IMG/VR virus record: IMGVR_UViG_3300029908_000004
Span: 1-64,000 of that record
DNA: 64,000 nucleotides
Reading direction: 5' to 3' (one strand)
Positions within the stretch are counted from its first letter, which is position 1. Every line of letters starts with the position of its first letter. The notes under the pieces were generated by a model that was not told the origin of the DNA, ran no database searches, and was given only the letters and a program-made list of their open reading frames with translations. Positions 3,626-59,452 of the stretch are shown piece by piece. Position numbers and translations under genes: made by a program.

Positions 3626-4261
3626 ATGCGAGGTACTAAGTTAAAGTTAGTTAAAAATCAGGTATTTGGTTACCTAGAAATAATAGAGGAAGACGGATTC
3701 AAACTTCAACCTAGCAACTCTAAGAAGAACTTGAAGGGGATCCGCAAATACCTCTGGAAATGTAGATGTACAGCGCCTAGTATAAAAACCGGAATAGTTT
3801 GTAACAAAATAGTAACTATAGCCGGCTCTGATATGGTTTCTGGACGTGTTATAAGTTGTGGTTGTTGTAGGGGCCATTTCGGTATGGGTGGTTTAGGAAA
3901 AGAGTATTCAAAACGCCGTAACGGAATAGGTAATCCTGCTTTTAGGACTTTGTTACGTAGATATAAGGGTGGTGCTAAAGATCGTAGTATAAAATGGACA
4001 TTAACTGATGAAGAATTCCTGGGATTAACGAGTTCTCCTTGCTTTTATACAGGGAGGTTACCAAGTTCCGAATCCAGATCTGAGAAGTCCAATTTAGGAT
4101 TATATTTATACAATGGCATAGATAGACTAGATAGTTCTAAGGGATATACAAAGGATAATTGCGTACCTTGTTGTAAACAGGCAAACTTCGCTAAACATAC
4201 TCAATCTTTTGATGAATTCATTGAGATGTGTAATATGGTTTCAGACCGTTTTAGGAAGTAA
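3626..4261 (+). mobile_element. Antisense HNH homing endonuclease gene (HEG2)
   Basis: N-terminal WKCRC..C/SCGC element plus CFYTG...NGIDRLDSSKGYTKDNCVPCCKQANFAK; own SD and promoter. Confidence 0.88.
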
Positions 4262-26144: not shown

Positions 26145-26347
26145 TGGTGCTCACGGCGAGATTCGAACTCGCGACCCACACATTAGATTGTGTGTCTAAG
26201 TAGCTATAACGCGCTTTCCTACACATTTCAGTGATAGGAGTTAATCCTATCTCGGTTACGATGTACCTTTCGGGGCCTCCGCAACTCACTACCTATGACG
26301 AGCTTCCTAAGTTTGCTCCGCTCTTTCCATTCTAAGCTATCGTGAAC
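26145..26347 (-). ncRNA. 203-nt tRNA-like RNA: acceptor, D and T arms intact, anticodon region replaced by a long insertion
   Basis: GTTCACG/CGTGAGC-A-CCA acceptor; GCTT..GAGC D arm; GCGAG-TTCGAAT-CTCGC T arm. Confidence 0.7.
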
Positions 26348-26353
26348 AATATT

Positions 26354-26404
26354 TGGTACCGACGACGGGGATCGAACCTGCAACGGCTTTCGCCTCAACT
26401 GATT
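26354..26404 (-). pseudogene. Orphan 3' half of a type II tRNA (Leu-like)
   Basis: Variable arm GGCGAAAGCC, degenerate T arm, CGTCGGT-A-CCA; abuts the CCA of tRNA-Leu(TAG). Confidence 0.7.
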
Positions 26405-26983: not shown

Positions 26984-27366
26984 CTAGAAGTATTCTATTT
27001 TTATATTCTCTTGGGACATCATCTGGTCTACCTTCTTCCAGATTTCTTCATCAGTCATTTCTATGATAACATTACTTTGACCTAGTCTACGTGCTACTTC
27101 TATTTTATGCCAAGCTTTGAACGCAGAGGTATTAACACACTTAACGAACGCCTGTTCTTTGTTCTTGGCTTGGTCTCTACCATCTCTATGCTCAGCTGTT
27201 GCTCCAGAATCAATGTGGATACACCTTACACCATTCTGTTTGGCGTTTCTGTGAATATAGGTCTCCCGACCTAATGCTGACCGCCGTTACCGCCCGTGCA
27301 GAAAGTCTCAAAGGTAAAATCCTTGCGAGTGAGAGTAAATAATAGGTGCTTTTCTTTTTTAGACAT
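26984..27366 (-). CDS. GGQ peptide-release-factor-like protein (RF-1 domain, ArfB-like), interrupted by a 20-nt coding gap
   Basis: Frame 1, 27366-27274: MSKKEKHLLFTLTRKDFTFETFCTGGNGGQH then TAG. Frame 2 resumes at CAC 27253: HRNAKQNGVRCIHIDSGATAEHRDGRDQAKNKEQAF...IKIEYF*. The joined product would be 119 aa. Confidence 0.85.
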
Positions 27367-27949
27367 CTTGATTCCCCTTCTTGTGTTTAGCTAGGTAAGC
27401 AATGGCTTCTTCTAGGAGATGCTCATCTTCATTCAATAAACCTATGGCTGTGTTGCATTTGCTACATAGTAATCCTCTATGCTTCCCAGAGGAGTGGCAG
27501 TGATCCAGAGACAATCTAATCAATTTACCTTGTCTTGTCTTTGTTTCTTTCTCTTTACAGATAGCACACTTGCCTTCCTGTGCTTCATGAAGGTTATTAT
27601 ATTCCTGCCTTGTGACTCCGTACTTAGTTTTCAAGCAACTATTATAAGACTGCTCATATATCTTATCTTTGTTCTTGTGTCTGTTTCTAGTTGTTATCAG
27701 TCCTGTAGACTTGCTCCAGCAGGTTTTACAGATATGCCTTTTTCCTAATCTATCCCTCCGGTCGTAAAATTCACCTGATGTTTTATCAAGCTTGCATTTA
27801 GTACATATTCTTCCGGTTGGAGTTTCCAGTATAGATTTCTGGTATAGATTAAAGCAATTAGTAGAACAGAATGATTTACGGTTTGGTTTTATTTGACTGG
27901 GCTTCTTGGGGTGTACTTTCGTACAGTAGGTACATATTACATTCATCAT
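27359..27949 (-). mobile_element. Endonuclease VII-like HNH homing endonuclease gene (HEG3)
   Basis: LKTKYGVTRQEYNNLHEAQEGKCAIC...LSLDHCHSSGKHRGLLCSKCNTAIG; N-terminal zinc fingers. Confidence 0.9.
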
Positions 27950-31141: not shown

Positions 31142-31218
31142 TGGGAGCCCTAGTAGGATTCGAACCTACCTAATCCATCTACAGTAAACTGTTTAGGAAA
31201 CAGTGCTGGTATAGGGCC
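31142..31218 (-). tRNA. D-armless tRNA-Arg(CCT)-like RNA with a long variable region
   Basis: GGCCCTA/TAGGGCT acceptor; only TACCAGC before ACTGT-TT CCT AA-ACAGT; canonical T arm; CCA. Confidence 0.65.
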
Positions 31219-37056: not shown

Positions 37057-37191
37057 GGATATAGTTTGAACAAGATGTTTTTCGATGCTACCATTACACC
37101 AAGCTGGCATAAATTATTAAATGGTGCCAGCCCTGGGATTTGAACCCAGACCCGTTCGTTATGAGTGAAGATAACCTTGCTCTGTCGACCC
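37057..37191 (-). ncRNA. YrlA-like Y RNA 1 (permuted tRNA-like domain)
   Basis: GGGTCGA-N8-GGTTATC, then T arm CTGGG-TTCAAAT-CCCAG, acceptor GGCTGGC/GCCAGCT closed by a loop, D arm GTGT-AATGGTA-GCAT, and 3' CTTGTTCAAACTATATCC pairing with the 5' end. Confidence 0.85.
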
Positions 37192-39127: not shown

Positions 39128-39156
39128 TGGCGGTAGAGAGGAGAGTCGAACTCCTA
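39128..39156 (-). pseudogene. Orphan tRNA 3' end (Ser-like, G73)
   Basis: TTAGGAGTTCGACTCTCCTCTCTACCGCCA, just downstream of tRNA-Ser(TGA). Confidence 0.6.
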
Positions 39157-39181
39157 AGTCCGGTTAGGGTACTATAGTTTA

Positions 39182-40936: not shown

Positions 40937-40966
40937 TGGAGCTATCGAAGAGTCTCGAACTCTTGA
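40937..40966 (-). pseudogene. Degenerate tRNA 3' part
   Basis: AAGAG-TTCGAGA-CTCTT-CGATAGC-T-CCA with no matching 5' acceptor or D arm. Confidence 0.5.
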
Positions 40967-41006
40967 GTTTTATTTGTAGATTAAAATTGTAGCTGAACTC
41001 CCTCAA

Positions 41007-41426: not shown

Positions 41427-41448
41427 TGGGGTGCATGATGGGAGTCGA
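41427..41448 (-). pseudogene. 3' fragment of the original tRNA-His
   Basis: TCGACTCCCAT-CATGCAC-C-CCA pairs at all 8 positions (one G-U) with the 5' fragment GGTGCGTG at 42278-42285. Confidence 0.8.
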
Positions 41449-41488
41449 TTGACACTTTCGACTAAGTTATTCTATACTATATAGTTAT

Positions 41489-42154
41489 ATGATAACCCTA
41501 AGTATGGAACAATTTACCAAACTAAATAGTCGCTCACCAGTAGAATGTAAATGTGAACAATGTAACAGTCTTTTCTACAGAGTAAAACATGATTTACAGA
41601 CAGCTATTCGTAGGAAAGAACCAATATCATTTTGTTCGCCGAAGTGTTATGGTTTATACAGAAACACTAAGACTACTGTCAAATGTTTATGGTGTAAGTC
41701 TGAAGTAGTTAGAATACCAACTACTAAGAATGTCTTCTGTTCGAGATCGTGTTCTGCAAAATATAATAACACACATAAAACATTTGGGACTAGAAGATCG
41801 AAACTTGAGAGATTTCTAGAAGAACAAATAAAATTATCGTACCCCAATTTGGAGCTTATATGCAATAGCAAATCAGTCATCGGTTCAGAGTTAGATTTCT
41901 ATTTCCCGAGGCTCAGATTGGCGATAGAACTCAATGGTATTCTGCACTACGAACCAATCTATGGGACAGATAAATTCTCTAAAATTGTTGACAATGATAG
42001 ACAAAAAGTTAGATTATGTGAAGCTATGGGTATTGAGCTAGCAGTTATTAATTCTTCGTCATGTTCACGCATGAGCGCAGTATTTAAAACTAAGTATTTG
42101 GGGATAACACGTGAATTAATAGACTCTGTTATTGATAGAGGAAATTTGGGGTAG
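41489..42154 (+). mobile_element. Antisense PD-(D/E)XK/Vsr-like homing endonuclease gene with zinc fingers (HEG4)
   Basis: ELDFYFPRLRLAIELNGILHY; CSPKC/CSRSC repeats; TTGACA-18nt-TATACT promoter at 41449-41478. Confidence 0.8.
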
Positions 42155-42221
42155 ATAGAGAGGTTCAAACTCTCGCTAAGGGAGCCACAGACCCTCGTGC
42201 TTTCATTACACTATACCTACC
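42147..42221 (-). tRNA. tRNA-His(GTG), replacement copy
   Basis: G-1:C73; AGGGT-CT GTG GC-TCCCT; CCA. Confidence 0.88.
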
Positions 42222-44559: not shown

Positions 44560-44781
44560 ATGAACGATAATTTGATTAAAATCTGCCGTAAATGTAAAAT
44601 CCCTAAAGATCGTGACGAATTCCCGTGGAAGAACAAATCCAAAGGAATTCGCCATAATACTTGTAAGCATTGTACACGGGACTATAGTGAAAACTATTAC
44701 AAGTCAAATCAAAATGAACTATCAGAGAAAGCTAAACTACACCAAAGGGAGAAAAGAGCTGCTAAACCAAATGTGGTTTAA
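44560..44781 (+). pseudogene. Truncated antisense homing endonuclease (N-terminal zinc finger only; HEG5)
   Basis: KICRKCKIPK...EF...TCKHC; promoter TATACTATATA at 44534-44544 and SD GAGGTG; no nuclease domain. Confidence 0.65.
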
Positions 44782-48929: not shown

Positions 48930-49260
48930 AGGTAGACCCTAACCCGGTTAATCAACTAAGAAGATTAACAATACGCTGGGGCAGAAACACTGGCTAGGCT
49001 GGAAATCATCCAGGCTGGCAGAGTGTCGATACCAACAGCGTTTACGTTAACAGTTTTGCCTGTTATTGTTGTATAGTCGTTTAACGTGAGCCTATAGCAC
49101 GACCTGTCATTATTTGCAATTCATACCAAGCGAACCCGGGAGCGGCCCCTATGGTGGACACTCGGGATTCAACCTCCGTGCCCTTATAATTGGTGGACCG
49201 CGAGGGAGTTGAACCCTCGTTAATGGTCATGCTTACAAATAAATCATACAGGTTTAACCG
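48930..49260 (-). ncRNA. ssrA: Circularly permuted two-piece tmRNA
   Basis: The acceptor piece (49260-49191: T arm GAGGG-TTCAACT-CCCTC, GCGGTCC-A-CCA) precedes the coding piece starting GGGCCGC at 49148 (G3:U70). Helix 2 TTGCAAATAA/TTATTTGTAA; pk1-like element; AATAACA-GGC resume context; tag ORF 49060-48965. Confidence 0.85.
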
Positions 49261-49950: not shown

Positions 49951-50213
49951 GGATATAATTGGAATTGGATATTTCGGATATCTTAGTCCAGCAAACATCA
50001 CCAGCGTCAAATATCCTACACCTTTATGTGGTCAAAGGTAACCGCACTGACTTCTCAATACTAGTAGTGTCTTAACCAGACACAGGCTTATAACTATTTA
50101 ACCTCTGTGTTTGCTATTCTTTCAAATAGCTCTTCTCTATCAGAGAAGGTTTAATTGTCCCCGAGGTAACGGGTACTTGCACGGTTATAGAGATAACCAA
50201 GTTCCGGCGACCC
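49951..50213 (-). ncRNA. Long Y-RNA-family member (about 263 nt)
   Basis: GGGTCGC-N8-GGTTATC at the 5' end; GGAACTTGG pairs with the 3' CCAATTCC; ends TATATCC; several internal hairpins. Confidence 0.65.
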
Positions 50214-50445: not shown

Positions 50446-50667
50446 TTATTGCAATCCAAGTAGTGGAAGTTTTGCTCCACCACTCTTACCTCTTGTCTTC
50501 TTGCCGGGCTTGAACTTAGCCTTGGCATATCTGACAGAGGGTGGGTATGCTTTCATTACCCTTTCACGATGAGCTTCACGTTCAGCTGCCTTACGAAGTC
50601 TCGTAGCTTCTTTCTGCTCTTCAGTCCTTGGGAGATGTACAGTTTCTCCATTCACTCGACAGCGCAT
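50446..50667 (-). CDS. Small basic protein
   Basis: 73 aa, K/R-rich; SD AAGGAG. Confidence 0.55.
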   Translation of the reverse strand: MRCRVNGETVHLPRTEEQKEATRLRKAAEREAHRERVMKAYPPSVRYAKAKFKPGKKTRGKSGGAKLPLLGLQ

Positions 50668-50709
50668 ATGTAGCTCCTTTTAATGTTTGGAACTATTTAT
50701 TCATCTCTC

Positions 50710-50784
50710 GGATATGGATTGACAAAGGTATTGCCTGCACGCAGGCTGTCATTTTAATTGTAGATAACCTTTATACTTCGACCC
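50710..50784 (-). ncRNA. Short Y-RNA-family member
   Basis: GGGTCGA-N8-GGTTATC...CCTTTGTCAATCCATATCC; ends pair. Confidence 0.8.
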
Positions 50785-50802
50785 GAGATTCTTTGTTGCT
50801 TA

Positions 50803-50904
50803 AGATGTAGATTGATAAGGGAATGCCTTTTCCCGAGATGGATCCGGGAACCACTGTAGGCAACAGCTAGCTTGCGCTTTTAGATAACCCTTGTCGTTCG
50901 ACCC
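50803..50904 (-). ncRNA. Y-RNA-family member
   Basis: GGGTCGA-N8-GGTTATC...CCCTTATCAATCTACATCT. Confidence 0.8.
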
Positions 50905-50926
50905 TAAGCGGAATTTATATTGTTAT

Positions 50927-51026
50927 GGATATGGATTGATAAGGTTATGCCTTATTTGGGTATCGAAACCCGCTGCAGGCGACAGTTAGACTTTCGTCCA
51001 TCCAGATAATCCTCGTCGGTCGACCC
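50927..51026 (-). ncRNA. Y-RNA-family member with a T-loop-like hairpin
   Basis: GGGTCGA-N8-GATTATC...GGGTTTCGATACCC...CCTTATCAATCCATATCC. Confidence 0.8.
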
Positions 51027-51044
51027 ATAACAAAGTTGTTAAAA

Positions 51045-51188
51045 CTACTTCTTTTTACCACCCTTACCACGGTTACCACCAACGGTTGTGGTGGCTGTCT
51101 TGTTCAATGACTCGAAGCCGCCCTTTTTACTTGGTTTGCCAGTGCTACCGATCTTACCCTGACCCGGATCTTTACCCTTGTGAATCAT
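51045..51188 (-). CDS. Gly/Lys-rich basic peptide (47 aa)
   Basis: MIHKGKDPGQGKIGSTGKPSKKGGFESLNKTATTTVGGNRGKGGKKK; SD upstream. Confidence 0.55.
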   Translation of the reverse strand: MIHKGKDPGQGKIGSTGKPSKKGGFESLNKTATTTVGGNRGKGGKKK

Positions 51189-51219
51189 CGTACTCTCCCT
51201 TATTTGTACTACTTAATAT

Positions 51220-51240
51220 TGGTGGACCCAGCGAGAATTG
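51220..51240 (-). pseudogene. 3' fragment of the original tRNA-Ala
   Basis: CAATTCTCGC-TGGGTCC-A-CCA (U70) pairs with the 5' fragment GGGCTCT. Confidence 0.72.
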
Positions 51241-51283
51241 CACCTTTGTAAATGTTATACTATATAGATACGAAAGGATTTGT

Positions 51284-51362
51284 TGGTGGATCGTATGAGA
51301 ATCGAACTCATCTGAAATCTTCTTTGCAAAAGAAGTGACCACCCCGTGCAGTCCCACAACCC
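51284..51362 (-). tRNA. tRNA-Ala(TGC), replacement copy
   Basis: CTTCT-TT TGC AA-AGAAG; G3:U70; CCA. Confidence 0.88.
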
Positions 51363-51368
51363 ATTTAT

Positions 51369-51899
51369 ATGCCAATTCGTAACTGTTTATATTGTAACAA
51401 ACTATTTGATGCTCCACAACGTGATATTACCAGAGGTAATGGTAAATACTGTTCCAGGAAATGCTCTGGAAACTATAAGAGCTCTCTTCCTAGTAAAGCT
51501 CCTATTATAGAGCTTACTTGTGCTTATTGTAATAGTACATTTACTAAGCCTTCCAGATACGTTAGAAAAGCCAATTCTAGAAGCGGATTGCGCTTTTGTA
51601 ACCGTAAGTGTAAAGAACTTGGACAGCGATTAGACGGTGGTAACATAAAAGCTATACAACCATCTCATTTTGGCACAGGTACCGGAGAACACCATTATAG
51701 AGCAAAAGCTCTAAACGCATTCCCAAATAAGTGTAATAGATGTGGATATGATGAATTAATAGGGATCCTTGTTGTACACCACAAGGATCGTAACCGTTCC
51801 AATTCTCATCTATCAAACTTAGAGATTCTGTGCCCAAATTGTCACGCTAAAGAACATTACATTAATCACGATGGATCGTATAGCTCAAAGAGAAAATGA
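51369..51899 (+). mobile_element. Antisense HNH homing endonuclease gene (HEG6)
   Basis: CNRCG...VHHKDRNRSNSHLSNLEILCPNCHAKEH; CSRKC repeats; promoter motif at 51256-51266. Confidence 0.9.
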
Positions 51900-51900
51900 T

Positions 51901-51944
51901 GCTGCTTTGCAAGAGCATTGCTCTCCCGAATGAGCTAAGAGCCC
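51901..51944 (-). pseudogene. 5' fragment of the original tRNA-Ala(TGC)
   Basis: GGGCTCTTAGCTCATTCGGGAGAGCAATGCTCTTGCAAAGCAG, abutting the HEG6 stop codon. Confidence 0.8.
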
Positions 51945-52284
51945 ACGTCGTGCTTTCCTATTTAGTATACCACCAAATGTTGGAAAACACTAGAATCTTT
52001 AATCTCTTTCTCTTTCTCTTTCGCGACTCAACGCCTTCTGTTCGCGAGACCACCAGAACTTCCATGAAACACTTCTACCATCGTAGTACCAGCCAAGCGC
52101 TTTCAAACGTTCGTACGTTTCTGGTGAGGTTCCTGTCTTCTTAAGTTCTTCTGGCATTTTCTTTTCCTCATCTTGGGATTTTAGTGGAGTAGCCCGGCTA
52201 TCCGCGTCGGGCTACCCCGGTTAATTTGATGTCAAACCTAAATGGTTTTAACAAATTACGGTAGTTGTATAAACACGTGTCTGG

Positions 52285-52465
52285 AACTACGATTGTTTAC
52301 GTTAATCTCGGTGCTTTACCATTGAGCTACTCAGGCATATGTTTTGGGGCCCGAGGAGAGCATCGAACTCTCATACCCGATTTTGAAAGAAATCGTCTAC
52401 CAGATGTTGTTTCTACCAAGTGAACCTCTTGGGTAATAGATTAACGTTAAACTTAATCGTTTATT
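52285..52465 (-). ncRNA. Permuted tRNA-like RNA with a long closing stem and no GGGUCGA motif
   Basis: T arm GAGAG-TTCGATG-CTCTC, CTCGGGC-C-CCA, short linker, GCCTGAG, D arm GCTC-AATGGTA-AAGC; flanks ACGTTAATCT/AGATTAACGT pair. Confidence 0.7.
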
Positions 52466-52790
52466 TAACCTGACCCTGAGGTTGAAAGAATCCTTGCGGA
52501 CTCTTCCCAAGCTTGTTAGTTATTAGCCACTTTGTCTTTGTACTTAAGACCGGGCTTATTGCGTTTGTCCATCTTTTTCTTTGCTGATGCAATGTGTTTC
52601 TGCTTGTTACTGAACTTCATTGTACCACCTCTATAAAACATTTCTCCTACGGCAAGAAGACGAATCTTCTAGGTGGTAACATCGCATTAAACCCACGACT
52701 CTTGTTGGTTATGACCCAACCTCCGTTTACTACGTCCGTGCGACTAGTTCGTAGCGACCTCGGGGATTCCGTCCTATAGGAGAAAACTTA

Positions 52791-56986: not shown

Positions 56987-58687
56987 TTACTCCGCTTCTG
57001 CTTCTTCAGTTTCCAATACTTCCGTTTTCCCTGAAACGAATTGGGCAATCAACGAAGGCACATTGGTATCGAATCCAACCACGTCCAACGAACGTACATC
57101 GTTTGGATCTGCGATCGAGAATCCAGTTGCTGTCATCCCGATGACAATCTGATGAGCGTTACGTCCAGAACTCTGACGATAGCTCTCCAAAGCGCTAAAT
57201 ACGTGTTTAGGTCCTGCCCAAGTCTCGTTGTCAGTGATGTTGACAAACACATCGACTGGCATCTTCTTTTCTTGTGCATCCTTATATGGAAGTGAACAAT
57301 CTGTTCCTCCCCACCCTGTGCGTAGTGCCTTGGATATTGCTGCGTCTAGCTTCATGGATTTAACCAATCCAACATCAATCATCTTGGTGTTGTAGGAAGC
57401 AACGTGATGCCATGGCTCATTATGCATGATTACCATAGCCATTGCTACTGCACCCATGATTGGTGACATGTTTGGACAACCAACAAGATTTCCCCATCCC
57501 ATTGAGCCGGAACAATCCAAGCCAATGTAATAGTTCAAATTGGTGGTTTCAGCATTCTTAAACGTCTTATAGAACGCTGCGTCCATAGCATCCAAAACTG
57601 GTTTCACCACTGTCCAAGTCAACGAGCCACGAATGCCATGACCAGTTTGATAGGTTAACATAGCATTCAGAACAGTTAGTGGGTGAACACGACTACGTTG
57701 CAGATATTCCTGATCCGACAGACGTGTTACTACTAGCTTTGACGCCTCTGATAGAGGAGCTAACAGCTTGATGCTACTCATCTTACCAAGGTTCCTGATC
57801 ATTGCGTTCATGGGCATTTTCTGAAGCAATGCCTCCCAAACTGCAACGTGGTTCAATGCCTCTGTAGGGATCATTTCGCGAGTGAGGTTGTACTTCTGAA
57901 TCGCTGAAATGATTACCTTTGGGTCTTTTTCATTCTTCATTGCCTCGAACTGCTTAATCAGTTCTGGCAAGTCCTTCTCTAAATCGGTTGCTCCGTGCAG
58001 ACCTTTGGTAGCCCAATCAAACAAGGCTTTCTGCCCATTCGACAACGTAGCATGGGTACCTGCATGGGTGGCACGAAGGATGTCGCGATGGCTCCATCCT
58101 TGTGTTCCATCCACACGCCGTGATTGGTATTTCACCATCTGATAAGCCAGTTTCTGCTCATCTTTCTGTGTGTACCAATCTGCTACGCCGTTGCGTAGTG
58201 ACCTATTCCAACGCATCTTTGCGGCACCTTCGGCCTGTTTTGACCGCATGCCTTTCAGATATTCCATTAGTTGGAACAAATGCGTTCCGATACGTGCTAC
58301 GTCTGGCAGTTTATCCAAGGCGTAACCACGAGTGGATTTGTCACCGAATGCTATACACTGTGCCAACGCGAACAGGGCATAGTCATTCTTTGGAGCCCGG
58401 CCAGATACAGAGATATCGACAATCGTTTTTACTGTCTTCTCTCCATCTGCCGAAATACAGCGTTCAACGCACTTTGCGTTGTCACGCGTCAACTTGTCGG
58501 CACCAACATAATAAGTGCCACCTTCGCTTCCAAGAATTATAAATCTCTGGAGTCGGTCCCAGTCACTCAGTTCAAAAACATAACCTCCAGCGTTATTCTG
58601 AACTTGATTCTTTTCTGGGAATGGTTCACTTTGAGGAATTGTTGGCTTCATCGCCCCATACACATTTGTTAGGTTGGGTTTCTTCAT
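56987..58687 (-). CDS. rsr: Ro60/Rsr TROVE-domain RNA-binding protein with a vWA domain
   Basis: QVQNNAGGYVF...DRLQRFIILGSEGGTYY...KYQSR..GWSHRDILRATH...MIRNLGKMS...SRVHPL...LDCSGSM...GGTDCSLP...TDNETW...VVGFDTNVP. Confidence 0.96.
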   Translation of the reverse strand: MKKPNLTNVYGAMKPTIPQSEPFPEKNQVQNNAGGYVFELSDWDRLQRFIILGSEGGTYYVGADKLTRDNAKCVERCISADGEKTVKTIVDISVSGRAPKNDYALFALAQCIAFGDKSTRGYALDKLPDVARIGTHLFQLMEYLKGMRSKQAEGAAKMRWNRSLRNGVADWYTQKDEQKLAYQMVKYQSRRVDGTQGWSHRDILRATHAGTHATLSNGQKALFDWATKGLHGATDLEKDLPELIKQFEAMKNEKDPKVIISAIQKYNLTREMIPTEALNHVAVWEALLQKMPMNAMIRNLGKMSSIKLLAPLSEASKLVVTRLSDQEYLQRSRVHPLTVLNAMLTYQTGHGIRGSLTWTVVKPVLDAMDAAFYKTFKNAETTNLNYYIGLDCSGSMGWGNLVGCPNMSPIMGAVAMAMVIMHNEPWHHVASYNTKMIDVGLVKSMKLDAAISKALRTGWGGTDCSLPYKDAQEKKMPVDVFVNITDNETWAGPKHVFSALESYRQSSGRNAHQIVIGMTATGFSIADPNDVRSLDVVGFDTNVPSLIAQFVSGKTEVLETEEAEAE

Positions 58688-59331: not shown

Positions 59332-59452
59332 AGATATAAATTTGACTGGATGTTTTAGAGTGTCCTGCCAATTAGACGATGCCGGTTACCCGGTAGAGAG
59401 ATTCGAACTCCCATAACCCGCTCCATAGGCGATAACCCAATCGGGTCGACCC
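59332..59452 (-). ncRNA. YrlA-like Y RNA 3
   Basis: GGGTCGA-N8-GGTTATC; GGGAG-TTCGAAT-CTCTC; acceptor hairpin ACCGG-GTAA-CCGG; D arm GTCT-AATTGGC-AGGAC; 3' ATATCT. Confidence 0.85.

What the first reader, a model, noticed from the sequence alone, without database searches (positions are those of the whole stretch)
51220..51944. HNH cassette that splits tRNA-Ala and supplies a new tRNA-Ala inside its own antisense leader
Seen: the tRNA-Ala(TGC) 5' half ends at the HNH stop codon, and the 3' remnant with U70 lies at 51220-51240. An intact divergent tRNA-Ala (51284-51362) sits between the HNH promoter motif (51256-51266) and the HNH ATG, so the HNH mRNA leader is antisense to that tRNA. Inference: the same strategy as the His cassette, with possible tRNA-mediated antisense control of nuclease translation.
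Basis: partly seen in the sequence, partly recalled or inferred. Interest (0 to 1): 0.72.

Follow-up and report, generated by a model that had tools for sequence, protein, structure and literature searches.

The report
Homing nuclease cassette carrying spare tRNA-Ala
A small selfish DNA cassette, made of a DNA-cutting enzyme gene plus its own alanine tRNA gene, sits inside a giant peat phage's original alanine tRNA gene, breaking it and replacing it, and the same design turns up in other uncultured phages.

Summary
On the minus strand, a canonical tRNA-Ala(UGC) 5' part (positions 1-48; 51944..51897) ends at the HNH stop codon. A decayed 3' part (positions ~52-76 plus CCA; 51244..51220) lies about 650 bp away. 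Between them are a promoter-like motif, an intact but unusual tRNA-Ala (51284-51362, the only tRNA-Ala in the 215-kb genome) and an intact 176-aa HNH gene on the opposite strand.

Comparative data support a mobile cassette. The three closest HNH homologues (65-69% identity) have the same motif, spacer, antisense tRNA-Ala and HNH start, and their contigs match this genome almost only across the cassette. A 38%-identical homologue (L107) lies with its own tRNA-Ala between two halves of a split tRNA-Ala whose acceptor strands pair 7/7. A syntenic relative (L157) has an intact tRNA-Ala and no HNH. In 83 homologue loci, tRNA-Ala is about 18-fold enriched next to the gene.

Best reading: a free-standing HNH homing endonuclease that invades tRNA-Ala genes at the variable-loop/T-stem junction and brings a replacement tRNA. 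Cleavage, immunity of the carried tRNA, and the transcription start are all inferred. The proposed tRNA-mediated antisense control of translation is untested and less likely than plain convergent-transcription antisense effects. I rate it a new variant of a known kind (compare T4 SegB).

The parts
51220..51244 (-). 3' remnant of the resident tRNA-Ala 'A': T loop, T-stem 3' strand, acceptor 3' strand with U70, and ACCA. It is decayed (G at position 55; the 7:66 pair is mismatched).
   Evidence: Sequence. nhmmer matched model 56-76 weakly. It pairs 6 of 7 with the acceptor of the 5' part. Equivalent remnants occur in L073, L074, L075 and L107.
51245..51896 (.). The inserted cassette, about 650 bp: junction filler, promoter-like motif, spacer, tRNA-Ala B and the HNH coding sequence.
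   Evidence: It is bounded by the two halves of tRNA-Ala A. tblastx homology to L073, L074 and L075 is confined to 51216-51896, apart from one weak hit elsewhere.
51256..51267 (+). Promoter-like motif TATACTATATAG, the putative HNH promoter.
   Evidence: Exact copy also at 41473-41484, upstream of another plus-strand nuclease gene. 15 copies with at most 1 mismatch in the genome, 10 of them followed within 60 nt by an ORF of at least 50 aa. Conserved in the L073-75 cassettes and upstream of genes in related contigs.
51268..51283 (+). Conserved spacer ATACGAAAGGATTTGT with a Shine-Dalgarno-like GAAAGGA, 7 nt before the GTG formed by the antisense CCA end of the tRNA.
   Evidence: Nearly identical in the window, L073, L074 and L075. 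uORF analysis.
51284..51362 (-). Intact tRNA-Ala(UGC) 'B', 79 nt with encoded CCA. It has G3:U70, a 6-bp D stem and a 7-nt variable loop, and is the only tRNA-Ala in the genome.
   Evidence: ARAGORN; cloverleaf minimum-free-energy fold; covariation in 41 relatives; 78% identity to the tRNA-Ala of Aeromonas Lahexavirus phages.
51369..51899 (+). HNH endonuclease gene, 176 aa: N-terminal CxxC/CSxxC zinc-finger-like repeats and a C-terminal HNH motif. Its ATG is 6 nt from the tRNA 5' end with no Shine-Dalgarno. Its stop codon lies in the old tRNA's variable loop.
   Evidence: ORF; Pfam HNH 22.2 bits against a 21.4 cut-off; phrog_1271 at 2e-21; invariant C/H/D/N residues kept; 312 homologues.
51897..51944 (-). 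5' part (positions 1-48) of the resident tRNA-Ala(UGC) 'A': acceptor 5' strand with G3, D arm, anticodon arm and variable loop.
   Evidence: nhmmer E 4e-6, model 1-44; Rfam tRNA partial match. It is the only clear orphan tRNA 5' fragment found in the genome; the one other 5'-type hit is the D arm inside the Y RNA-like element.
51958..51969 (-). The same promoter-like motif (TATACTAAATAG) on the minus strand, 13 nt upstream of the old tRNA's first base. It would drive minus-strand transcription through the pseudo-tRNA, antisense to HNH and into tRNA-Ala B.

Best explanation
This is a compact mobile cassette built around a free-standing HNH homing endonuclease.

Inferred mechanism: the nuclease cuts tRNA-Ala genes that lack the cassette, near the variable-loop/T-stem junction. 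The break is repaired by copying the cassette from a genome that has it. The target tRNA is left as a 5' part and a 3' remnant.

Shown: the cassette brings a whole, divergent tRNA-Ala gene, so the phage keeps a tRNA-Ala. In this genome that gene is the only tRNA-Ala.

Inferred: the carried tRNA is assumed not to be cut. The nuclease gene lies antisense within a minus-strand tRNA/gene array. Its likely promoter and a Shine-Dalgarno-like element lie beyond the carried tRNA, so its mRNA would begin with the tRNA's antisense. The whole gene would also be overlapped by read-through minus-strand transcripts, which would keep nuclease expression low.
For: Anatomy:
- The two tRNA-A pieces together cover positions 1-48 and about 52-76, and their acceptor strands pair 6 of 7 including G3:U70.
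- The HNH ORF is intact with all family-invariant residues.
- B is a covariation-supported tRNA-Ala and the only one in the 215-kb genome.

Mobility as a unit:
- The nearest HNH homologues (69, 67 and 65% identity) in L073, L074 and L075 have the same motif, 16-nt spacer and antisense tRNA-Ala, with 2-6 nt before the HNH ATG. Each has a tRNA 3' remnant just outside.
- tblastx between those contigs and this whole genome finds only the cassette, plus one weak hit elsewhere.

Independent case: L107 (38% identity) has 5' fragment, HNH (antisense), intact tRNA-Ala, 3' fragment. The fragment acceptor strands GGGGCAG and CTGCTCC pair 7 of 7, and the HNH stop is again at the junction.

Empty site: L157, syntenic with L073-75, has an uninterrupted tRNA-Ala and no HNH. 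Its homology to L075 starts in the T arm.

Target preference:
- In 83 homologue loci, 33 of 71 tRNAs adjacent to the HNH are Ala, against 11 of 235 non-adjacent ones.
- Head-to-head is the commonest geometry, with 15 adjacent tRNA-Ala.
- All Ala-linked homologues fall in one half of the HNH tree.

Other layouts also leave fragments next to an intact tRNA-Ala (L055, L084, L103, L104).

Precedent: T4 SegB recognises the T-arm motif of tRNA genes and spreads itself together with flanking tRNA genes (PMC2330249; PMC13096335).
Against: - No cleavage activity, target site or immunity of tRNA B has been shown.
- The 3' remnant in the window is weak on its own. At least 10 other orphan tRNA 3' fragments lie in this genome's tRNA region, so some such fragments arise by other routes.
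- ARAGORN does not call a tRNA when the two halves are joined with N filler, because the T-stem 5' strand is missing.
- In L074 and L075 the 5' and 3' fragments do not pair with each other, so their histories are more complex than one clean insertion.
- The window's cassette carries a different tRNA-Ala type (B) from L073-75, so the tRNA module has been exchanged at least once.
- The window phage and the L073-75 group share the promoter motif and a tRNA-Ala ... tRNA-Asp order. They may be distant relatives, so ancient vertical inheritance is not excluded.
- No cassette-free variant of this phage was seen in four runs.
Confidence: 0.7

Rival explanations
1. Recombination scars rather than a tRNA-carrying cassette. 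Under this reading tRNA-Ala B is the resident gene. The A fragments are debris of nuclease-triggered duplications, deletions or exchanges between tRNA genes through their conserved T arms, as in SegB-driven segmental amplification. The nuclease simply sits beside its tRNA.
For: There are many orphan 3' fragments across the tRNA region. In L074 and L075 the fragments do not match each other. There are several different fragment/intact layouts among homologues. SegB precedent: PMC13096335.
Against: The motif and spacer on one side of the tRNA and the HNH on the other are conserved together in contigs with no other similarity. In the window and in L107 the intact tRNA lies between complementary halves of one tRNA. 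A5 is the genome's only clear orphan 5' fragment and lies exactly at the HNH stop.
Confidence: 0.15
2. An old, vertically inherited and now immobile arrangement. A single ancient insertion in an ancestor of this phage group was kept because the phage needs tRNA-Ala B, and the nuclease is domesticated or idle.
For: The same promoter motif and the same Ala ... Asp tRNA order occur in the window and in the L073-75/L157 group. The 3' remnant is decayed. Identical copies occur in other peat samples with no polymorphism.
Against: L157 lacks the cassette and has an intact tRNA-Ala. HNH identity is 65-69% while the flanking genes show no detectable similarity. The split architecture appears at four or more places on the HNH tree, although deep branches are unresolved. 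The ORF is intact with all invariant residues.
Confidence: 0.1
3. One reading: mature tRNA-Ala B, or its precursor, pairs with the complementary HNH leader and controls nuclease translation.
For: The geometry is conserved. In the window, L073-75 and L107 the tRNA 5' end is 1-6 nt from an ATG that has no Shine-Dalgarno. A Shine-Dalgarno-like element sits just beyond the tRNA 3' end.
Against: A folded, aminoacylated tRNA is a poor antisense partner (general knowledge). Other head-to-head homologues have their own Shine-Dalgarno in a 12-40 nt gap. The uORF that reaches the HNH start in L073, L074, L075, L092 and L107 stops 54 nt short in the window, and that pattern is not beyond chance. The leader has no special fold. 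No strand-specific RNA data were available.
Confidence: 0.15
4. An intron-like or split functional tRNA. Under this reading the A halves are joined at the RNA level, by a group I intron or by trans-splicing, so tRNA A is still made.
For: The two halves are near-complete and in the right order and strand.
Against: No intron family matches even at E up to 10. The intervening RNA would be antisense HNH plus a whole tRNA. The T-stem 5' strand is missing and the T loop is mutated.
Confidence: 0.02

Closest known systems
T4/T6 SegB, a free-standing homing endonuclease in the phage tRNA gene cluster (PMC2330249, PMC13096335)
   Same: It is a free-standing nuclease gene inside a phage tRNA array. Its recognition element is the conserved T-arm of tRNA genes. 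It spreads itself together with neighbouring tRNA genes, and SegB homologues are statistically linked to tRNAs.
   Different: SegB is GIY-YIG, not HNH. It sits between intact tRNA genes and has no isotype preference. No split target tRNA with a replacement tRNA inside the inserted unit, and no tRNA inside the nuclease leader, is described in the parts of those papers I read.
'Fractured genes': homing endonuclease genes inserted into protein genes, which are rescued by split inteins (PMC2677866, abstract only)
   Same: A free-standing nuclease gene physically splits a host gene, and the element comes with a device that preserves the host function.
   Different: There the rescue is protein trans-splicing of the two halves. 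Here the halves are abandoned and a complete spare gene is supplied.
Integrative elements (prophages, ICEs) that insert into tRNA genes and carry a copy of the tRNA 3' end (textbook knowledge)
   Same: Insertion into a tRNA gene with a duplication that keeps one intact copy and leaves a displaced fragment. Layouts such as L084, L104 and L103 look like this.
   Different: There is no integrase or att recombination here. The driver is an HNH nuclease with repair-mediated copying, and a whole tRNA is carried rather than a matching 3' end.
Synthetic 'cleave-and-rescue' and 'home-and-rescue' gene drives (my own knowledge, not checked in the library)
   Same: The logic matches: a nuclease that disrupts a useful gene is linked to a recoded copy that the nuclease does not cut.
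   Different: Those are engineered Cas9 systems in animals. Here immunity of the carried tRNA is only inferred, and phage tRNAs are helpful rather than essential.
Group I introns with homing endonuclease ORFs in bacterial and phage tRNA genes (PMC3984707, abstract)
   Same: A homing element inside a tRNA gene that avoids loss of the tRNA function.
   Different: No ribozyme is present. The insertion is in the T-stem rather than the anticodon loop, and function is kept by a second gene rather than by splicing.

Membership tests
HNH endonuclease (Pfam PF01844; PHROG 1271) | Profile match above the curated threshold | tested here: met
   Pfam HNH 22.2 bits against a 21.4 cut-off, which is marginal. 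phrog_1271 at 2.4e-21 over residues 4-163.
HNH endonuclease (Pfam PF01844; PHROG 1271) | Conserved catalytic and metal-binding residues of the HNH motif (His, Asn, His, with flanking Cys pairs) | tested here: met
   H137, H138, D140, N150, C155, C158, H159 and H163 are invariant in a 19-sequence alignment that includes the window protein. No solved structure is close enough for a sequence match, and the fold was not modelled.
Free-standing homing endonuclease gene | Present or absent at the same locus among related genomes | tested here: met
   L157 has an intact tRNA-Ala and no HNH, while the syntenic L073, L074 and L075 carry the cassette. This was shown for the sister group only. For this phage itself, only identical copies were found.
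Free-standing homing endonuclease gene | The gene and its immediate flanks are shared between genomes that are otherwise dissimilar | tested here: met
   tblastx of L073, L074 and L075 against the whole 215-kb genome hits only 51216-51896, plus one weak hit elsewhere.
Free-standing homing endonuclease gene | Site-specific cleavage of the allele that lacks the gene, and resistance of the allele that has it | not testable with these tools
   Needs an enzyme assay. The only indication is that insertion junctions sit at tRNA positions about 43-52 in the window, L074 and L107.
SegB-type tRNA-cluster homing endonuclease | GIY-YIG catalytic domain | tested here: not met
   Only HNH-type families match. 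It works like SegB but is not a member.
Bacterial-type tRNA-Ala (element B) | Cloverleaf, UGC anticodon, G3:U70 identity pair, A73 and CCA | tested here: met
   ARAGORN call. The minimum-free-energy cloverleaf has a 7-bp acceptor stem and a 5-bp T stem. G3:U70 is present in 40 of 41 family members, with compensatory changes in three stems. It falls below Rfam's tRNA gathering score because of an atypical D arm.
Group I/II intron in a tRNA gene | Ribozyme core detectable between the two tRNA halves | tested here: not met
   There is no intron family among Rfam matches at E up to 10 over 50600-52500. The same holds at E up to 1 for the L055 split tRNA.
Integrase-mediated island in a tRNA gene | An integrase or recombinase gene and att repeats at both ends | tested here: not met
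   The 650-bp insertion holds only the tRNA and the HNH ORF. The only repeat is a 10-mer of doubtful meaning.

The most novel reading that the evidence does not exclude
A natural 'home-and-rescue' selfish element family. HNH homing endonucleases home into phage tRNA-Ala genes at the variable-loop/T-stem junction and carry a divergent, cleavage-immune tRNA-Ala. That tRNA is embedded, antisense, in the nuclease's own leader, so nuclease expression is tied to transcription of the tRNA it brings. Such cassettes would also be a route by which unusual tRNA scaffolds, such as the 6-bp D-stem B type, spread between phages.
Probability: 0.4. Interest if true: 0.75.

Novelty: new variant of a known kind. 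Interest (0 to 1): 0.62.

Why it matters
Homing endonucleases usually avoid harming their host by hiding in self-splicing introns or inteins, or by sitting between genes. Here the element destroys its target gene and pays the cost by importing a working copy. That is a third solution, with the same logic as engineered cleave-and-rescue gene drives.

It would also explain three things:
- how phage tRNA sets turn over,
- why tRNA arrays are littered with orphan fragments,
- how atypical tRNA scaffolds move between unrelated phages.

The family is large (hundreds of homologues) and has a clear isotype preference. It therefore offers a set of natural nucleases whose DNA targets, tRNA-Ala genes, can be predicted and tested.

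Tried and rejected
- GenBank phage search. Megablast found nothing. blastn found only the 82-nt tRNA-Ala in Aeromonas Lahexavirus phages, which have no adjacent HNH.
- IMG/VR searches for the A-type 5' half, the HNH and a flanking protein. These gave only an identical copy of this phage and two very distant relatives without a usable locus. The spacer pattern gave one chance hit.
- Joining the two A halves with 0-5 N and running ARAGORN gave no tRNA call, because the T-stem 5' strand is absent. This is inconclusive rather than negative.
- Group I intron reading: no ribozyme match.
- Metatranscriptome and metagenome runs from peat hold the region, but only as unstranded contigs. There is no transcription start, no strand information and no cassette-free joint.
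- Translational coupling through the antisense tRNA. The uORF is open to the HNH start in 5 of 14 head-to-head loci, about what chance gives (roughly 30% per frame), and it is closed in the window.
- The 10-nt repeat TGGATCGTAT (51287-51296 and 51872-51881) could be a trace of a template switch, but 6 of its 10 bases are fixed by the conserved DG[PS]Y codons. About 0.25 such repeats are expected by chance in the region. Left unexplained.
- Sigma-70 scan: nothing convincing for the HNH. A minus-strand ATTACA-18-TATAAT inside the HNH gene could serve tRNA B, but its conservation may only reflect the coding sequence.
- PDB sequence search: no informative match.
- No structure or complex prediction was run, because neither would bear on the main claim.

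Full report
**Setting.** The window is the first 64 kb of a 215,291-bp IMG/VR virus record, 41% G+C, found in peat metagenomes. It carries a long minus-strand array of tRNA genes. ARAGORN finds 28 in the window and 30 in the genome. Rfam adds a tRNA-His at 42150-42220. Almost all genes around the finding are on the minus strand. The 176-aa ORF at 51369-51899 is one of a few plus-strand ORFs.

**The observation.** I read the minus strand from 51969 downwards. It contains, in order:
- a copy of a promoter-like motif (TATACTAAATAG, 51969-51958);
- 13 nt later, a canonical tRNA-Ala 5' part (51944-51897): GGGCTCT, D arm, anticodon arm with UGC, CAUCA;
- the antisense of the HNH ORF;
- 6 nt of spacer;
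- an intact tRNA-Ala (51362-51284);
- a 16-nt spacer;
- the antisense of the motif TATACTATATAG (51267-51256);
- 11 nt of filler;
- GGTGCAATTCTCGCTGGGTCCACCA (51244-51220), a T loop, T-stem 3' strand, acceptor 3' strand and ACCA.

A tRNA-Ala profile finds the 5' part at E 4e-6 (model positions 1-44). It finds the 3' piece only weakly (6.9 bits). The Rfam tRNA model gives 19.6 bits over 51872-51944. The HNH stop codon is the complement of variable-loop bases 46-48.

The two pieces together lack only about positions 49-51. Their acceptor strands pair at 6 of 7 positions, including G3:U70. By my arithmetic the chance of that is about 0.02 for a given 7-mer, and about 0.01 once the requirement for an adjoining ACCA within 100 nt either side of the cassette end (about 200 positions) is added. 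ARAGORN does not call the joined halves, because the T-stem 5' strand is gone. The caveat is that the 3' remnant is decayed and would not be convincing alone.

**The parts.**

*The HNH ORF.* It matches Pfam HNH just above threshold and PHROG 1271 strongly. It keeps every residue that is invariant among 19 homologues. It has more than 300 homologues at E below 1e-5.

*tRNA-Ala B.* It is unusual: G8, a 6-bp D stem with a 5-nt loop, and a 7-nt variable loop. This is why Rfam's tRNA model misses it. Its D-arm signature occurs in 66 IMG/VR contigs. The 41 distinct tRNA-Ala members keep G3:U70 in 40 cases and show many compensatory changes in the acceptor, anticodon and T stems. Aeromonas Lahexavirus phages have a 78%-identical copy. 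B is the only tRNA-Ala in the genome.

*The motif.* It is over-represented, with 2 exact and 13 one-mismatch copies against roughly 0.1 and 3 expected. Ten of the 15 copies are followed within 60 nt by an ORF of at least 50 aa in the same direction. Four of those ORFs are nuclease genes. The same motif precedes genes in contigs related to the sister cassettes. It behaves like a promoter of this phage group. This is inference, not proof.

**Comparative evidence for a mobile unit.** The three nearest HNH homologues have 69, 67 and 65% identity. They come from a JGI metagenome, an NCBI MAG and a Logan assembly. Each lies on the strand opposite to its neighbours. Each has, upstream in this order:
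- a tRNA 3' remnant,
- the motif,
- a nearly identical 16-nt spacer,
- an intact antisense tRNA-Ala,
- 2-6 nt,
- the HNH ATG.

tblastx of these 3-7 kb loci against the whole 215-kb genome hits only 51216-51896, apart from one weak hit elsewhere. Their carried tRNA-Ala is a different type from B, so the tRNA module has been swapped within a conserved frame.

I then scanned metagenome contigs with an alignment of the family, which returned 80 further loci.
- tRNA-Ala made up 33 of the 71 tRNAs lying within 120 nt of the HNH gene, but only 11 of the 235 tRNAs elsewhere in the same loci. That is about 18-fold enrichment by my arithmetic.
- The commonest layout is the window's head-to-head one, with 15 adjacent tRNA-Ala.
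- All Ala-linked genes fall in one half of the HNH tree. The window clusters with L073-75 at 100/100 support.

The clearest independent case is L107 (38% identity). It reads: 5' fragment (1-46), HNH stop at the junction, HNH, 1 nt, intact divergent tRNA-Ala, hairpin spacer with a TATACTA-like motif and GAGGAG, then 3' fragment. The fragment acceptor strands GGGGCAG and CTGCTCC pair 7 of 7. L074 also has both fragments, and L073, L075 and L087 have the 3' one.

L157 is a 232-kb contig syntenic with L073-75. It has an uninterrupted tRNA-Ala followed by the same odd tRNA-like gene and has no HNH. Its DNA homology to L075 begins in the T arm. Other family members show variations on the theme:
- L055: a sense-oriented HNH inside a B-type tRNA-Ala, after the anticodon loop, with no intron.
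- L103: 5' fragment, HNH, intact tRNA.
- L084 and L104: 3' fragment, HNH, intact tRNA.

**Mechanism.**

*Shown:* the anatomy, the conservation of the unit, the isotype preference, and the empty site in a sister group.

*Inferred:* the HNH protein cuts cassette-free tRNA-Ala genes near positions 43-52, and the break is repaired from a cassette-bearing genome. The old halves or the tRNA's own conserved parts would serve as homology. The carried tRNA would escape cutting.

The closest experimentally studied system is T4 SegB. It recognises the T-arm motif of tRNA genes, cuts near their 3' ends, and drives inheritance of itself plus neighbouring tRNA genes (PMC2330249). It can also amplify a tRNA gene (PMC13096335). 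SegB is GIY-YIG, shows no isotype preference, and sits between intact genes.

**Expression.** In the window, L073-75 and L107 the ATG has no Shine-Dalgarno and lies 1-6 nt from the tRNA's 5' end. A Shine-Dalgarno-like GAAAGGA (GAGGAG in L107) lies just beyond the tRNA's 3' end, 7 nt before the GTG that the antisense CCA end creates.

Translation from there runs in frame into HNH in L074 and L075. It ends on or just after the HNH ATG in L073, L092 and L107. In the window it stops 54 nt short, and the overall pattern is no better than chance. The leader has no unusual fold.

The minus-strand motif upstream of the old tRNA would send transcripts through the entire HNH gene in antisense and on into tRNA B. 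This is a simpler source of antisense damping than pairing by the mature tRNA.

Peat metatranscriptome contigs cover the region: X10 spans 51095-52128 and X20 spans 51624-52001. They carry no strand information, and the runs may contain DNA.

**Caveats.**
- At least ten other orphan tRNA 3' fragments lie in this genome's tRNA region, so fragments also arise in other ways.
- The L074 and L075 fragments do not pair with each other.
- The window phage and the L073-75 group share the promoter motif and an Ala ... Asp tRNA order, so they may be distant relatives.
- No cassette-free variant of this phage was found.
- A 10-nt repeat (51287-51296 and 51872-51881) remains unexplained.

**Verdict.** The 'splits one tRNA-Ala and supplies another' reading is well supported by comparison. 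The antisense-control idea is open. I found no description of a homing endonuclease cassette that carries a replacement tRNA inside the split target in three full-text searches. I rate it a new variant of a known kind.

Noticed in passing
window 52280-52399 (-) and 56987-58687 (-): A Y RNA-like element: T arm, closed acceptor-like stem, D arm. It matches Rfam YrlA at 26.6 bits, E 0.005, below the gathering score. It lies 4.6 kb from a phage-encoded Ro60/Rsr orthologue (TROVE 1e-39, Ro60 vWA 2e-47). A metatranscriptome run has an adapter-flanked contig at 52219-52327 with depth 72.
   Followed up: partly
window 50700-51040 (-): Three tandem, related elements of about 100 nt (GGGTCGA...GGTTATCT...CCTTATCAATCCATATCC) lie between tRNA-Asp and the cassette. 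They look like structured small RNAs and have no Rfam match.
   Followed up: no
window 49956-50208: The highest depth in the randomly primed metatranscriptome run X20 (about 230, against 0-30 nearby) lies just upstream, in minus sense, of tRNA-Asp. No ORF or known RNA is assigned there.
   Followed up: no
window 26145-26184, 26354-26390, 31142-31177, 37122-37169, 39128-39161, 40937-40969, 49191-49237, 59393-59420 (all -): Orphan tRNA 3' fragments (T arm, acceptor 3' strand, CCA) are scattered through the tRNA array. The one at 49191-49237 ends in GGTCCACCA, like a tRNA-Ala. They may be scars of earlier tRNA replacement events.
   Followed up: partly
window 41427-42220: The 'His cassette'. A 221-aa plus-strand nuclease (PHROG homing/HNH families, no Pfam hit) follows an exact copy of the motif (41473-41484). 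Its 3' end overlaps by 5 nt an intact tRNA-His, which ARAGORN misses and Rfam scores at 50 bits. A possible tRNA-His 3' remnant (...CACCCCA) lies near 41430. The geometry differs from the Ala cassette.
   Followed up: partly
window 3626-4261 (+), 27359-27949 (-), 44560-44781 (+): Further genes sit directly behind one-mismatch copies of the same motif: an endonuclease VII-like protein (by PHROG), a zinc-finger plus Endonuclease_7 protein (Pfam 5e-22), and a 73-aa plus-strand ORF of unknown function.
   Followed up: partly
window 51284-51362 and loci L008-L072: The B-type tRNA scaffold (G8, 6-bp D stem with a 5-nt loop, 7-nt variable loop ending in CAG) is widespread in uncultured phages. It is used for tRNA-Ala and also for tRNA-Asp (GUC).
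   Followed up: partly
window 51287-51296 and 51872-51881: An exact 10-nt direct repeat, TGGATCGTAT, links the antisense 3' end of tRNA-Ala B and the D-G-S-Y codons near the HNH C-terminus. Together with the 5' half it gives a tRNA-length (73 nt) pseudo-gene without a T arm. It may be chance or the trace of a template switch.
   Followed up: partly
L055 6330-7125 (-); L103 1135-1694; L084 2386-3078: Other layouts of the same HNH family. L055: a B-type tRNA-Ala split after the anticodon loop by a sense-oriented HNH gene, with no intron. L103: a 5' fragment, HNH, then an intact tRNA-Ala. L084: a 3' fragment, HNH, then an intact tRNA-Ala.
   Followed up: partly
L157 2971-3054, L073 3542-3624, L075 2572-2655; L158 3420-3498: An odd CCA-ending tRNA-like gene (GGGGAAGTAGCATAAA...CCCACCA), not called by ARAGORN, lies next to the tRNA-Ala locus in the sister phage group. 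L158 has a tRNA-Ala with a non-canonical T loop (GGCAGAG).
   Followed up: no
window 51272: A metatranscriptome contig (run X10) reads T instead of G in the conserved spacer (ATACGAAAGG becomes ATACTAAAGG). The DNA runs show G. It is probably a strain variant.
   Followed up: no
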